Of a DNA stretch of 64,000 nt, positions 3,838 through 45,981 are shown in pieces. The stretch comes from Salpingoeca rosetta. Its lineage: Eukaryota > Protista > Choanoflagellata. The DNA lies in assembly GCA_033442325.1 (NCBI GenBank), contig JAWQFM010000002.1, positions 1,750,307-1,814,306 of the forward strand, read 5' to 3'. Each line of letters starts with the position of its first letter. The first letter of the stretch is position 1. The notes below the pieces were generated by a model. It was not told the DNA's origin and did not search any database. It saw only the letters and a program-made list of their open reading frames with translations. A program made the position numbers and the translations under genes.

Positions 3838-4384
3838 TCAAGAGGAGCTTGTGTGGGTGTCGGTGGTGGTGAGGCCGAGAATCTTCAAGCATGTGTCTGC
3901 GTACTCCCTAAAGATGGCGACGTTGGCCATGGCCTTCTGTACTTCCCGCGCAGGCGCCCGTGCGGTGCTCACGCGCTTCAGGGTGGCCTGCAGGTGCGGG
4001 TTGGCCAGCTGTGCTCGCACCTCCTTGGTGGCAGACAGAAGGTCCAACAGCTGCCCCGGCACCTGGTCATCCTCGGTGATGGTCGGTGCTTGCTCGCCAC
4101 GTTCCCCGCCAGCGTTTGCCACTGCACCTGGCTCGGTGCTGGGCGCAGGCTCGCAAGGCACCTGCTTGTGCTGCTTGTAGCACTTGAGAGAGCAGTAGCG
4201 CAGTTCACACCGTGGGCACTTGTACTTTGGATTCTCCTCCGTGCACACGCCGCACAGCCGTGCCTGCTGCTGGTGTGGTTGCTTACTGTGTTGCGGCTGT
4301 CTCTGTTGTGGCAGTTGTTGTTGTTGCTTCTGCTGCTGTTGCGGTCGTTGGTGAGGTGTTGTGGGCTTGGCGCTTGTCGATCGC

Positions 4385-4454
<70 letters not shown>

Positions 4455-5193
4455 GCTGCTGCTGCTGCAGCTGTTGTTGTTGTTGTTGTTGTTGCTGCTG
4501 CTGTTGTTGCTGCTGTGGCGTGGATGTGCCATGTGCACTTGCGAGCCGCTTGTTGACGCAGTCTGTCTTGATCGTGTCGACAACTGCCTCTGTGGTCTCC
4601 TCTTTCATTTTGGCTTGGTCGTCCTGTGATTGCTGGTCCACACCCACTTGCCTGTGGCTGGATTGCCGCGCACGCTTGGTCGCGGGTTCCTCATCGTAGC
4701 ACTGCTGCCGTACCTGTTGTTGCAGCTGTTGTTGTTGTTGTTGCTGTTTCTGCTGTTTCTGCTCACCCTTTGCCTCCACGTCTTGTGCTTGCTCTTGGTC
4801 TTGTGCTTGCCCTTGCGCCTGATCTTCCGGCCCTTGAGCTTGTCCCTGATCTTGTGGCTTCTTGTCCTTGCGCGCGGGATGGTCGTGGTGCTTGGCGCTG
4901 CCCGTGATGGCTGGGTTGAGCGTGAGCGATGACGACTGCCACGGCTGCACCACGTGCTCTGCATCATCGCCACCACCTTGATTTCTCCTGTGGAAGCGGC
5001 CTCCTCCCCTTCCGCCCCTTCCCCTGCCTCTTCCGCGATGTCCACGCCCCCTGTATCCACCTCTACGTCCTCCACGCTGCCCTCTTCCTCCCCTGCCCCT
5101 GCCCCTGCCCCTGCCTCTGCCTCTGCCTCTCCCTCTGCCTCTCCCACCACGTTGCTGCTGCCGTGGCGAGCACGTTGCGCTGGCGGCTTCCAT
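3838..5193 (-). CDS. ZNHIT3: Zinc finger HIT protein (ZNHIT3/Hit1-like) with N-terminal RGG box and polyQ tracts; start codon uncertain (5193 preferred)
   Basis: zf-HIT CGVCTEENPKYKCPRCELRYCSLKCYKQHK followed by ZNHIT3-like C-terminal helices (DQVPGQLLDLLSATKEVRAQLANPHLQ...FREYADTCLKIL). RG/RGG tract at ~4990-5150; polyQ at ~4385-4512. Confidence 0.8.
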
Positions 5194-5335
5194 ATCTTCG
5201 TGTGTCGCCTGTCGCACGTATTTTGAGAAGGAAAACGAGAGGAAGGACACAAGACCGCCAACAACGCACAGATACCCAGCAGCGCACACCCACGCAACGC
5301 ACATCGTCGCTTCAGACTGCTGGCCATCTTGCGGG
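5194..5335. promoter_or_regulatory. Putative compact bidirectional promoter/5' region between ZNHIT3 and dymeclin
   Basis: Divergent ATGs at 5193(-) and 5336(+), separated by 142 bp. Confidence 0.5.
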
Positions 5336-11421
<6,086 letters not shown>

Positions 11422-12148: not shown

Positions 12149-17392
<5,244 letters not shown>

Positions 17393-17696
17393 GGCGTCAG
17401 TGACCGTTCCCTTTTGCACTGCTCGCCTCCTCCGCTGTGGTGCCAGACACAACAATCAAACCAAAACAACAACAACAACACCCTCAGCAAGCGATGACGA
17501 AGTCAGTTGTGCCCGCCTTGTTGCCTTGCTTTTGCTTGTAACGCCTTCTTGCTGTCCTCTCACTCGCGCACACAACAAGCAAGGTTGTAGAAAGTTGTTG
17601 AAAATACACGCAATTTTCTACCCACACCAACAAGCCAACAAGGTCACATCACAAAGCACACACCGTCAGCCATCACACACAAGCAACAGCGCGAAG

Positions 17697-20120
17697 ATGA
17701 GCAAGTCCGTGACGGAGACCAGCAATGAGCTGACGGATGGGCTGGACATGGCAAGCCCGGAGCAGATTGTGCGCTTGCTGCGTCAGGCTGATGCGCAGAT
17801 GTTCAGTGGGTGGCGCGAATTCCCAGGCATCAATGACACCTCCACTATCGACACCATGGCGGAGCTTGCTGAGGTCGCTTCCACCATCCTTGCCGCCTCA
17901 CCGCACACCAAGCCCGCGCGGCGGACAGCAGCCAAGGGGCAGGGCTTCAAGCTGTCGGCGTCTGCAAACACCTCTGCCAAGGCCACGTCCCCGATGACGT
18001 GCGTGCACTCGCCGACTCTTGCTGCGTCCGTGTACGCGACATCAAGGGTCGTCATCACTGGCAGCGGCACGTCTGGTCGCATGGCCTTCTTCATCTGCCG
18101 CGCCTTCAATGAGATGATGCTGCGGTCCGGCCGCGCCCCTTGCTTTGAGTACCTGCATGCAGGAGAAGATCCGGCCCTGTTCGTGTCGCGGGAGGCTCCC
18201 GAGGACAACTGGCAGCTGGCGCAGCGCCGCCTGGCAGAGGTCATGTCCCGCTCCGAGCGCATCATGCTCGTCGGCATCACGTGCGGCCTCTCGGCCCCGT
18301 TTGTCGCCAGCCAGCTCGAGTATGCCATGGGCTTCCTCAACTCCAAGGTGCACGCCGTGGCCCTGCTCGGATTCAACCCCGTGGAGCGCGCACGCAACGC
18401 GCCCGTCGAGGGCTGGCACCGCACGGTCGCCGACGTCGTGCAGGAGATGGCACGGCGCAGGGCGGAGGGCGAGCCCTGCTTCATCCTCAACCCCGTCGTT
18501 GGACCAGAGGCCGTCACAGGGTCCACGCGCATGAAGGGCGGTTCGGCCACCAAGTTCCTGCTGGAGATTGTGTTTGAGCGGGCGTTTGTGGCCATGGCTG
18601 CCAACGTGGCGACACCTGGCCCGTCCACGCCGTCAACACCGGAAACCCGGCGCCGTGGCAGCCGCGACTGCAGGGCGGATCGGCGCACGCACTCGCCATC
18701 GCCAGCCCGCGCAACAAGCGGCGCAGTCTCGTCATCATCACAGGAGACCGCTACCGTGGACTCGGCCACCGCAGCAACGACGACGCCGACGACAGTACCA
18801 GCCGAGCCAGCAGCCACGGCAGCCACTGCACCAACGGCAGCCACGGCAGAACAAGGGTCCTCCAACAACCATCACACCCTGCAGAGCATCCTGTTCCCGT
18901 TCCTGCGTCGCCACCACCAGCAGCACCATCACCGCCACCACCAGCGCCACCATCACCGCCGCACTGGCAGCGCCACATCGTCACCCGACAGCCAACAGCA
19001 GCAGCAGCAGCAGTCGCAGCTGTGCGAGGGCGGGTGTCTTGGACGCGCCAGCATCAGCGCTCTCCTGATGAACTATGAGGCAGCGGTGCGCGCCACGTAT
19101 CTTTCGCTTGTCGATATTGCCACTGTTGTTGCCATGGGAGCTGAGGCCCTGAGCAAGGGCGGGCACATCTACTACCTCGGCCGCAACTCATATGGCCTTG
19201 CCGCCGTGATTGACGCGAGCGAGTGCCAGCCCACGTACAATGCGCGCTTCGAGGATGTGCGTGCGTTCCTGTGTGGCGGGTATGCGACGCTGCGCAACGT
19301 GCAGGGCGACCTGTCGTCCCACTCGCGTGACTTCCGCCTCGGTTGGTGCCACTTCGGCGAGGACATTGTGCCGACGCTGACTTCACACGACCTCGTCGTT
19401 GTCGTGGATGGCGCGTACACGTGTGCAGACACGCCGGCGGCGATGGAGGACGAGAAGCTGCTGCCGTCCATCCTGACGGACGTCAAGGCCAAGGGCGCCG
19501 CGCTCGTTGCAGCCGTGGTCGGTGATGTGCAGTGCAAGGCCACCTCCCACCCGGTCTACGCATCATCGTCATCATCATCATCACCATCATCATCGTCATC
19601 ATCGCCTGTGGATGAGGTGTTACAGCAGGAGTTGTCGAGCCCACAGCGTTTTGATTTTGTTCTGCGCGTGGATCTGCAGCACGTGGCGTTTGATACGCTC
19701 CCCATCCCCGTGTTTGCTGAAATTGCGATGAAGCTCGTTCTAAACGCAATTACAACAGGCGCGTTTGTCCTCACGGGCAAAGTCATGAAGAACCGCATGA
19801 TCGACCTGCAGGTACTTTCGTTTTGCGTGTGCGTGTGTGTGTGTTTGCGTGTGTGTATGTGTGTGTTTGCGTGTGTATGTGTGTGTGTGTGTGTTTGCGT
19901 GTGTGGGTGGGGGACTGAGCTTTCCTGAAGCAATCTACACCCGGTTCAACTGCGACCGTCTGTCACTCACGTCTGGTCGATGCCTCGTGGCGACAGGTGA
20001 GCAACAACAAGTTGTTCTTCCGCTCGCTGGGAATCATCCAGGAGTTTTCGGGCGTGAGCGAAACACACGCGCGCACCGCTCTCCTCCGCTCCATTTACGA
20101 CTGCACAGACGTCTCAAAGG

Positions 20121-20189
<69 letters not shown>

Positions 20190-20476
20190 GGTACGAATCA
20201 ATTGTGGCGTCACTGTTCATGGTCTTGTTTGCTCACGGGCGCCAATGTTACCATCGTCCACGTGCGTGTGTGCATGCGTTCATGTGTGGCCGTCAGGTGT
20301 GTGATGCGCCCATCAGCCAGCACATCCGCAGCGCCGTCGCTGCTGCCCAGGCCGCCCATCGCGTCGTCCCAACAGCGGTCGTTCTCGCGTCCCAGCCCGA
20401 TCTCTCCCCAGACGCAGCGAGGAAGCTGCTGGCTGCACACCCCATTGTCGCACACGCCCTCAGCGAACTCAACTAG
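17697..20476 (+). CDS. GCKR: Glucokinase regulatory protein homolog / tandem double-SIS MurQ-like (putative N-acetylmuramate-6-phosphate etherase)
   Basis: Exons 17697-19811, 19997-20122, 20297-20476. Motifs VTETSNELT..LDMAS..IVRLLRQAD, GSGTSGRMAF, SREAPED, VGITCGLSAPFVA, LGFNPVERAR, LNPVVGPEAVTGSTRMKGGSATK, DASECQPTY and MKLVLNAITTGAFVLTGKVMKNRMIDLQVSNNKLFFR. Confidence 0.92.
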
Positions 20477-21057
20477 GCATGTGAAGCACTCTCTGTAGTT
20501 TTGTTTGTTTGTGTCTGTGTCTGTGTGTGTGTGTCTGTGTGTGTGTGTGTGTCTGTATTCGTGCGCAATTTCCAGAGTGAACCTCTTTTTCTCCTTGCGC
20601 GTGTCTGTATGTCTCTCTGTGCGCATGCTTCTCCCTGTGTGTGCTGTGTGATGGATTAGGGCTTTGCATCGAAACTACACTTTGATTGTCTGCCGACATC
20701 GGTTTGCGTTTGTGCACGTGCGGTTTTGGATGTGGGAATGAACAAACATGTCAAACATAGCCAAGACAAGCGATGCACGTATGAACACTGTGGGAAGGAA
20801 GGAACGAAAGGAGGGGAGCGAATTGTCAGCGTGCAATGCAGCCACAGGATGTTCGATTAAACACACATGAAATGAATGGGGTGGGATTGAGAGCGGAAAC
20901 AACGGACCAGTCCGCGCGAAGAAAAGCGAAAGCGCGAGCGAGGAGAGGGGAGGGGGGCAATGCAAGCCAAGAAGGAACGGAACTTACAGTGCAAGTTTAT
21001 ACACGCACAGGTGCATTGGTTCACAGTTACACAGACACACCTGCAAACAAACACCTA

Positions 21058-34605: not shown

Positions 34606-45981
<11,376 letters not shown>

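What the first reader, a model, noticed from the sequence alone, without database searches (positions are those of the whole stretch)
17697..20476. GKRP homolog retaining bacterial MurQ catalytic motifs: likely a peptidoglycan-sugar etherase in a bacterivore
Seen: the two-SIS-repeat GCKR architecture. Repeat 1 carries GSGTSGR and SREAPED (18186-18206); repeat 2 carries IDASECQPTY (~19209-19238), almost identical to bacterial MurQ DASECPPTY, whereas vertebrate GKRP is recalled as the drifted DGVECIHTF. Established: GKRP derives from a duplicated MurQ (N-acetylmuramate-6-phosphate etherase); MurQ uses the Glu of DASEC and the Glu of GAED; a protist (Naegleria) GKRP-like protein is an efficient etherase while vertebrate GKRP is nearly inactive. 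Inference: this protein builds one composite active site from the two repeats and lets the organism recover GlcNAc-6-P and lactate from prey cell walls, representing the enzymatic state before co-option as the vertebrate glucokinase inhibitor.
Basis: partly seen in the sequence, partly recalled or inferred. Interest (0 to 1): 0.72.

Follow-up and report, generated by a model that had tools for sequence, protein, structure and literature searches.

The report
Choanoflagellate GKRP-type MurNAc-6-phosphate etherase gene
This is an expressed gene of the choanoflagellate Salpingoeca rosetta, already annotated as a glucokinase regulatory protein, that most likely works as an enzyme salvaging a bacterial cell-wall sugar; that role is already published for the same family in other protists, so the finding is correct but ordinary.

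Summary
A three-exon gene (17697-20476, + strand) encodes an 806-aa protein with GKRP_SIS_N, GKRP_SIS_2 and the GKRP lid domain. All motifs sit at the stated coordinates.

The window is Salpingoeca rosetta. The protein is identical to the NCBI entry "glucokinase regulatory protein [Salpingoeca rosetta]". Stranded RNA-seq covers the exons, and transcript contigs show both (GT)n-rich introns removed.

E. coli MurQ Glu114 aligns to E169 in SIS-1, and Glu83 aligns to E509 in SIS-2. Every residue that contacts the sugar phosphate in human GKRP (4BB9) is kept or conservatively replaced. The model matches solved GKRPs (TM 0.85-0.86). The genome also encodes a bona fide AnmK, the kinase that makes MurNAc-6-P. 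An etherase role in digesting prey peptidoglycan is therefore well supported, though not assayed.

It is not new. The idea was published for Naegleria (2009), for free-living euglenozoans (2020) and for lancelet (2026).

The "retained" motifs are also the family default: fish, lamprey, lancelet, sponges and bacteria all keep them.

S. rosetta has a second paralog on contig C31, which groups with sponge genes. Which paralog is orthologous to animal GCKR is unresolved, so the "pre-co-option ancestor" claim is unproven.

The parts
17620..17696 (+). 5' UTR (approximate transcript start)
   Evidence: Transcript contigs begin at 17620 (X8) and 17650 (X4). The ATG at 17697 is the first ATG in this stretch, so the upstream in-frame ATG at 17175 is not in the mRNA.
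17697..19811 (+). Exon 1, 705 aa: N-terminal helices, SIS-1, the low-complexity linker and most of SIS-2
   Evidence: Identical to P0001 residues 1-705. Pfam GKRP_SIS_N and GKRP_SIS_2. Covered throughout by one RNA contig, 17620-19555.
18060..18080 (+). GSGTSGR phosphate-binding loop of SIS-1 (residues 122-128)
   Evidence: Aligns to human GKRP G107/T109/S110. Nearly invariant in 107 homologs.
18186..18206 (+). SREAPED (residues 164-170); E169 is the equivalent of E. coli MurQ Glu114 and human GKRP Glu153
   Evidence: E166, E169 and D170 are invariant in A2.
18273..18299 (+). GITCGLSAP loop (residues 193-201), equivalent to human S179-S183
18519..18542 (+). GSTRMKGG (residues 275-282), equivalent to human G256/S258/R259
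   Evidence: G275, S276, R278, M279 and K280 are invariant.
18645..18971 (+). Lineage-specific disordered insert between SIS-1 and SIS-2 (residues 317-425, rich in Ala, Thr, Ser, His and Gln)
   Evidence: pLDDT under 50. Absent from most homologs. Kept in the mRNA, so it is not an intron (X8 record 7).
17931..18029 (+). Smaller disordered insert before the first strand of SIS-1 (residues 79-111)
   Evidence: pLDDT under 50. A gap in most homologs.
19179..19199 (+). GRNSYGL (residues 495-501): the degenerate GTSGR position of SIS-2
19209..19238 (+). IDASECQPTY (residues 505-514); E509 is the equivalent of E. coli MurQ Glu83 and human GKRP Glu348
   Evidence: D506 and E509 are invariant in A2.
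19812..19996 (+). Intron 1, 185 nt, GT..AG, imperfect (GT)n
   Evidence: Zero RNA depth. Contigs X4 record 6 and X8 record 9 join the flanks. A loose end at 19994 carries the end of exon 1. Splice sites.
19997..20122 (+). Exon 2, 42 aa: start of the lid domain with SNNKLFFR (N708, K710, R714 = human N512, K514, R518)
   Evidence: Matches P0001 706-747. Pfam GKRP-like_C..
20123..20296 (+). Intron 2, 174 nt, GT..AG; begins with a perfect (GT)n run; it is in frame and has no stop codon
   Evidence: Near-zero RNA depth and joined contigs..
20297..20476 (+). Exon 3, 59 aa plus the stop codon: end of the lid domain
   Evidence: Matches P0001 748-806.
20477..20500 (+). Short 3' UTR (approximate)
   Evidence: Contig pieces end at 20495 and depth is zero from 20503.

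Best explanation
The gene encodes a cytosolic, single-chain "pseudo-dimer" N-acetylmuramate-6-phosphate etherase (lyase) of the GKRP family in the bacterivorous choanoflagellate Salpingoeca rosetta.

Two MurQ-like SIS domains and a C-terminal lid build one active site:
- SIS-1 gives the phosphate-binding GTSGR loop, the T195-S199 loop, S276-R278 and the Glu114-equivalent E169.
- SIS-2 gives the Glu83-equivalent E509.
- The lid gives N708, K710 and R714.

The mirror-image site is degenerate. The enzyme would convert MurNAc-6-P to GlcNAc-6-P plus D-lactate. Its substrate would be supplied at least by the genome's AnmK (anhydro-MurNAc to MurNAc-6-P), and its product would drain through NagA-like and NagB-like enzymes.

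Shown here: the gene model, its expression and splicing, family membership, the fold, conservation of every ligand-contact residue, and the presence of AnmK. Inferred: catalysis, the physiological substrate, and prey cell wall as the source.
For: - Pfam finds the three GKRP domains.
- PDB sequence hits to GKRP reach 1e-68 to 1e-76.
- The AlphaFold model has pLDDT 81.5 and pTM 0.82. Foldseek's best hits are 3w0l_B and 4bb9 (TMt 0.85-0.86), followed by MurQ 4lzj and 4s12.
- E. coli MurQ E114 aligns to E169 and E83 aligns to E509.
- The human 4BB9 contact list (PMC4109836) maps onto identical or conservative residues.
- These positions are invariant or nearly so in 107 homologs.
- The homologous Naegleria and lancelet proteins are reported as active etherases (bioRxiv 10.64898/2026.05.08.723886). 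The same role is proposed for free-living euglenozoans (PMC7052976).
- The gene is expressed and correctly spliced: stranded raw RNA reads from one study cover the exons, and contigs of two further studies join them.
- AnmK is present and scores above the NCBIfam equivalog cut-off, 458 against 387 bits.
- NagA-like and NagB-like loci exist.
Against: - No assay has been done.
- None of the lysozyme, lytic transglycosylase or amidase families searched was found: GH25, GH23/SLT, GH24 and Amidase_2. The GH22 and destabilase searches had silent controls. How muropeptides would be released and reach the cytosol is therefore unknown.
- A NAGK/MurK-type kinase gave only a weak hit of 28 bits.
- The full protein falls just under the NCBIfam MurQ subfamily cut-off, 163.9 against 168 bits.
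- A second paralog exists, so the two copies may have divided or changed substrates.
- About 200 residues of disordered inserts are unusual for the family.
Confidence: 0.75

Rival explanations
1. It is an active enzyme of the same fold, but its physiological substrate is not MurNAc-6-P. It might act on another 3-O-substituted or otherwise modified sugar phosphate, with MurNAc-6-P handled by the second paralog on C31, or the reverse.
For: Two paralogs coexist in S. rosetta and in Monosiga, and their second-domain motifs differ consistently: DASEC.PTY against DASEMVDTY. [quoted passage not shown]
Against: The window's copy carries the MurQ-like version of every motif (ECxPTY, as in E. coli ECPPTY). 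The proteins with reported etherase activity include lancelet, which has DASECVPTY. AnmK in the genome argues that MurNAc-6-P is actually made.
Confidence: 0.15
2. It is a non-catalytic regulator that binds a sugar phosphate and inhibits a hexokinase or glucokinase, as vertebrate GKRP does.
For: It shares family and fold with vertebrate GKRP, and NCBI names it that way.
Against: According to the 2026 preprint, the GCK interaction arose only in jawed vertebrates through an inserted loop, and lancelet and tunicate GKRPs do not inhibit their GCKs. Both catalytic Glu residues are intact here.
Confidence: 0.05
3. It is a decaying or non-functional gene. The (GT)n runs and the long low-complexity inserts would mark a pseudogene or a mis-assembled model.
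For: Microsatellite-filled interruptions, and three disordered inserts absent from most homologs.
Against: The reading frame is intact. Both interruptions are GT-AG introns that are removed from the RNA, and the inserts are retained in frame in the mRNA. All invariant family positions are kept. A close relative, P0003, shares 65-73% identity, with the same motifs preserved.
Confidence: 0.03

Closest known systems
Naegleria gruberi GKRP-like protein (Veiga-da-Cunha et al., Biochem J 2009, as summarised in bioRxiv 10.64898/2026.05.08.723886 and PMC7052976)
   Same: A two-repeat MurQ-derived protein in a bacterivorous protist. It is reported as an efficient MurNAc-6-P etherase and proposed to serve digestion of bacterial walls. 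This is the same inference as is made here.
   Different: Different eukaryotic supergroup. The Naegleria sequence was not among the named hits, so it was not aligned here. The S. rosetta protein carries about 200 extra disordered residues and has a paralog.
Lancelet (Branchiostoma) GKRP
   Same: Same three-domain architecture and the same motifs (GCGTSGR, SQEAPED, DASECVPTY). Reported to be an active etherase that does not inhibit GCK.
   Different: 38% identity. It lies in the eumetazoan clade, whose relation to the window's clade is unresolved.
Bacterial MurQ (E. coli b2428; H. influenzae 4LZJ/1NRI; Yersinia 4S12)
   Same: SIS fold, GTSGR, DASEC Glu83 and GAED Glu114, and the lid with the NxK motif.
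   Different: MurQ is a homodimer of about 300 aa with two equivalent sites. Here the two halves are fused, each half has lost a complementary set of motifs, and only one site remains.
Vertebrate glucokinase regulatory protein (human 4BB9, rat 4LC9, Xenopus 3W0L)
   Same: Full-length homology (E 1e-68 to 1e-76), fold TM 0.85-0.86, and the same ligand-contact positions.
   Different: Mammals have GVECIHTF in place of ASECQPTY and are reported to lack etherase activity. The GCK-binding function is specific to gnathostomes.
Bacterial two-repeat GKRP-like proteins (Sumerlaeota, Phycisphaerae metagenome-assembled genomes)
   Same: Same fused architecture with all three Pfam domains, about 40% identity, and the same motifs.
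   Different: They form their own strongly supported clade (100*), whose position relative to the eukaryotic clades is unresolved.

Membership tests
GKRP family (fused double-SIS MurQ-derived proteins; Pfam PF22645 + PF22198 + PF20741) | All three domains present, in order, above the Pfam gathering scores | tested here: met
   120, 65.3 and 76 bits against cut-offs of 27, 27 and 27.7.
GKRP family (fused double-SIS MurQ-derived proteins; Pfam PF22645 + PF22198 + PF20741) | Whole-chain fold superimposable on solved GKRP structures | tested here: met
   Model pTM 0.82. Foldseek gives 3w0l_B and 4bb9 at E 5e-38 and 4e-36, TMt 0.85-0.86.
MurNAc-6-P etherase (EC 4.2.1.126, MurQ function) | Acid/base Glu residues equivalent to E. 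coli MurQ Glu83 and Glu114. The assignment of these residues as catalytic rests on my own knowledge of Hadi et al. 2008; that paper is not held in the library. | tested here: met
   E114 aligns to E169 and E83 aligns to E509 by BLASTP against the E. coli murQ translation. Both are invariant in 107 homologs.
MurNAc-6-P etherase (EC 4.2.1.126, MurQ function) | Sugar-phosphate pocket residues intact and contributed to one site | tested here: met
   The contacts listed for 4BB9 (G107, T109, S110, E153, S179-S183, G256, S258, R259, E348, H351, N512, K514, L515, R518) map to S123, T125, S126, E169, T195-S199, G275, T277, R278, E509, P512, N708, K710, L711 and R714. Convergence is inferred from homology. 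Model coordinates could not be measured.
MurNAc-6-P etherase (EC 4.2.1.126, MurQ function) | Score above the NCBIfam MurQ model cut-offs | tested here: not met
   NF003915 163.9 against 168; NF009222 138 against 255; TIGR00274 133.6 against 302. This is expected for a split, two-repeat relative. It bears on "is a MurQ", not on "works like one".
MurNAc-6-P etherase (EC 4.2.1.126, MurQ function) | Conversion of MurNAc-6-P to GlcNAc-6-P plus D-lactate | not testable with these tools
   Needs an enzyme assay or complementation.
MurNAc-6-P etherase (EC 4.2.1.126, MurQ function) | A pathway partner that makes the substrate is present in the same genome | tested here: met
   AnmK at C11:629844-631736. 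The annotated protein P0121 scores 458 bits against the 387-bit equivalog cut-off. A MurK/NAGK-type kinase was inconclusive.
Vertebrate-type glucokinase inhibitor (functional GKRP) | GCK-binding loop and inhibition of glucokinase; modulation by F6P and F1P | not tested
   The literature places the origin of this interaction in jawed vertebrates. It was not examined residue by residue here and cannot be assayed.

The most novel reading that the evidence does not exclude
Choanoflagellates keep two ancient GKRP paralogs. Type A is the window's gene, which has MurQ-like DASECxPTY and few introns. Type B is PTSG_12927 on C31, which has DASEMVDTY and at least 13 exon matches. Sponges from four classes carry only type B, while eumetazoans carry a type whose motifs resemble A.

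If eumetazoan GCKR is orthologous to type A, then sponges and other animals lost the two paralogs reciprocally. The window's gene would then be the true pre-co-option ortholog of human GCKR. It would work with a bacterial-like (possibly horizontally acquired) AnmK as a prey-peptidoglycan salvage pathway in the closest relatives of animals.
Probability: 0.25. Interest if true: 0.45.

Novelty: already known. Interest (0 to 1): 0.2.

Why it matters
It places an intact, expressed GKRP-type etherase together with an AnmK in the closest living relatives of animals. That fits the published picture that GKRP began as an enzyme for bacterial cell-wall sugar salvage and only later became the vertebrate glucokinase inhibitor.

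The gene, its annotation and this functional idea are all already public, so it adds a data point rather than a discovery.

The part that might interest specialists is the paralogy. There are two copies in choanoflagellates, the sponge genes side with the other copy, and orthology to animal GCKR is unresolved. This complicates the "single locus" narrative for early animals.

Tried and rejected
- **Trypanosomatid origin.** I first took the window for a trypanosomatid because of its GC content and (GT)n runs. The GT-AG introns and the 100% hit to S. rosetta rule this out.
- **Longer ORF from the ATG at 17175.** Rejected. The RNA starts near 17620, and 17697 is the first ATG in the transcript.
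- **The 109-residue low-complexity insert as an unannotated intron.** Rejected. One transcript contig runs without a break from 17620 to 19555.
- **The joint 19015 to 18772 and the C>A at 18786.** Rejected as cross-mapping. They come from an unrelated abundant transcript that shares CAG and ACG repeats: a 587-nt contig at depth 581, with only about 20 letters aligned.
- **Gene clustering with pathway partners.** None. The Pfam hits among the window's larger ORFs are ZNHIT3-like, dymeclin-like, ankyrin and Nup96-like.
- **Lysozyme and related families.** GH25, SLT/GH23, GH24 and Amidase_2 were not found. The GH22 and destabilase searches were uninformative because their controls were silent.
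- **Literature on MurQ Glu83/Glu114 and the Veiga-da-Cunha 2009 paper.** Neither is held in the library. Those points rest on secondary citations and on my own knowledge.
- **Resolving orthology by tree.** The central branch has 19% support, and the AU test gives p 0.53.

Full report
**What is there**

The region holds a three-exon gene on the + strand:
- exon 1: 17697-19811
- exon 2: 19997-20122
- exon 3: 20297-20473, with the stop codon ending at 20476

Both interruptions have canonical GT..AG ends and are full of (GT)n: 185 nt and 174 nt. Pfam finds GKRP_SIS_N, GKRP_SIS_2 and the GKRP lid domain.

**Identity and how the spliced model was handled**

The word-based protein search returned an 806-aa protein, P0001, named by NCBI "glucokinase regulatory protein [Salpingoeca rosetta]". 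Exon 1 translates identically to its residues 1-705. Exons 2 and 3 match residues 706-747 and 748-806.

They were searched one by one by reference, and the full-length work used the stored public protein. The same applies to AnmK (P0121) and to the second paralog (P0241).

The genome handle, 55.4 Mb in 68 contigs, is the assembly from which the S. rosetta identification above was made. The gene is therefore already annotated in a well-studied bacterivorous choanoflagellate.

**Expression**

Two stranded raw RNA-seq runs cover all three exons in one orientation. Depth is zero in intron 1 and essentially zero in intron 2. Transcript contigs from two other studies join 19608-19808 | 19994-20114 | 20295-20495, and a loose end at 19994 carries the end of exon 1.

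One contig runs unbroken from 17620 to 19555, so the long low-complexity insert is part of the mRNA. The ATG at 17697 is the first in the transcript.

**Active site**

E. coli MurQ was taken from the annotated K-12 record.
- Against SIS-1, its Glu114 (the GAED motif) aligns to E169.
- Against SIS-2, its Glu83 (the DASEC motif) aligns to E509.
- SIS-1 lacks a conserved Glu83 equivalent.
- SIS-2 lacks GTSGR (it has GRNSYGL instead) and lacks GAED.

So only one composite site can exist.

The residues listed as contacting fructose phosphate in human GKRP 4BB9 (PMC4109836) come from SIS-1, SIS-2 and the lid. Through the alignment they map to S123, T125, S126, E169, T195-S199, G275, T277, R278, E509, P512, N708, K710, L711 and R714. 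In a 107-sequence alignment these positions are invariant or nearly so.

An AlphaFold model built on that alignment has pLDDT 81.5 and pTM 0.82. Only the inserts (residues 79-111 and 317-425) are disordered. Foldseek ranks the GKRP structures first (TMt 0.85-0.86) and MurQ next. I could not measure inter-residue distances, so convergence of the two Glu residues is inferred from homology to liganded structures.

That Glu83 and Glu114 are the catalytic residues of MurQ is my recollection of Hadi et al. 2008. That paper and the 2009 Biochem J paper are not in the library.

**Pathway context**

- The genome encodes an AnmK in three exon matches on C11. Its annotated protein scores 458 bits against a 387-bit equivalog cut-off, and its nearest relatives are bacterial, at 50-59% identity.
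- NagA-like and glucosamine-6-P-isomerase-family loci exist.
- No GH25, SLT/GH23, GH24 or Amidase_2 genes were found. The GH22 and destabilase searches had silent controls.
- A BadF/NAGK-type kinase gave only a weak hit.
- The window's neighbouring genes are unrelated to the pathway.

**What is already known**

The 2026 preprint states that GKRP derives from a duplicated, fused MurQ. It reports that the Naegleria homolog is an etherase comparable to the bacterial enzymes and probably serves digestion of bacterial walls. It also reports that lancelet GKRP is an active etherase and that rat GKRP is not. Butenko et al. 2020 make the same functional inference for free-living euglenozoans. No paper in the library combines "choanoflagellate" with "etherase".

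**The motifs are not special to this gene**

In a motif table of 43 family members, GxGTSGR, SxExxED and DASE are present in:
- both choanoflagellate groups
- Capsaspora
- four sponges
- a cnidarian, echinoderms, molluscs and a hemichordate
- lancelet, a tunicate, lamprey and a fish
- bacterial two-repeat proteins

Only the caecilian (MEAVGCIPAF) in that table, and the mammalian sequences, have drifted.

**A second paralog**

Searching the genome with lancelet GKRP found a second, many-exon gene on C31. It is annotated as hypothetical protein PTSG_12927 (P0241, 621 aa). It keeps both Glu residues but carries DASEMVDTY.

Monosiga also has both types. Trees give four well-supported groups:
- type A: the window's gene, Monosiga A, other choanoflagellate transcripts and Capsaspora (96*)
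- type B plus all four sponges (100*)
- eumetazoans (87)
- bacteria (100*)

The relations among the four are unresolved: the central branch has 19% support, and the AU test of A plus eumetazoans gives p 0.53. The preprint also reports a pre-metazoan duplication. Whether the window's gene is the ortholog of vertebrate GCKR is therefore open.

**Verdict**

The etherase interpretation is well supported by homology and context but has not been assayed, and it is already in the literature and in the annotation. The evolutionary framing needs the paralogy caveat. Interest is low.

Noticed in passing
G000:C31 about 695380-701680 (+); L017:3384-9676: A second GKRP-family gene in the same genome (NCBI PTSG_12927, P0241, 621 aa). 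It has at least 13 exon matches and the motifs GCGTSGR, SNELPED and DASEMVDTY. It groups with a second Monosiga gene (P0252) and with sponge GKRP-like proteins from four classes (100* support), apart from the other animals.
   Followed up: partly
G000:C11:629844-631736 (+); L006:690-2582: A three-exon anhydro-N-acetylmuramic acid kinase gene (P0121, 410 aa), above the NCBIfam equivalog cut-off. Its closest relatives are bacterial, at 50-59% identity, which suggests horizontal origin. It is a likely supplier of MurNAc-6-P.
   Followed up: partly
window 20123-20296: Intron 2 is 174 nt, a multiple of three, and has no stop codon. If retained it would add 58 in-frame residues, mostly Cys-Val repeats. 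RNA shows it is removed.
   Followed up: yes
window 18772-19015: Very high apparent RNA depth, a "goes back 244" joint and a C>A at 18786. All come from one abundant unrelated transcript that shares CAG and ACG repeats with the low-complexity insert. This is a mapping artefact.
   Followed up: yes
window 17400-17613: RNA reads of the opposite orientation end just upstream of the gene's 5' end. This implies a neighbouring minus-strand transcript close to the 5' end of the GKRP gene.
   Followed up: no
P0316 (Rhinatrema bivittatum GKRP), alignment: The caecilian protein has MEAVGCIPAF, so the DASEC glutamate is replaced by Gly, and it has GCGNSGR in place of GCGTSGR. The ancestral site has decayed further here than in the mammalian sequences.
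   Followed up: no
P0252 (Monosiga brevicollis type B), alignment: The GITCGLSAP block aligns to unrelated residues (ILTAPTIDM). This is probably a gene-model error at an exon boundary rather than a real loss.
   Followed up: no
whole genome G000: Six-frame family searches found no GH25, SLT/GH23, GH24 or Amidase_2 genes. The enzymes that would release MurNAc or anhydro-MurNAc from prey walls in this bacterivore were not identified.
   Followed up: partly
window 3838-5679 (-), 9119-10087 (+), 34875-36167 (-): The neighbouring ORFs carry zf-HIT/ZNHIT3, dymeclin and Nup96 domains. These are ordinary eukaryotic housekeeping genes with no link to the etherase pathway.
   Followed up: no
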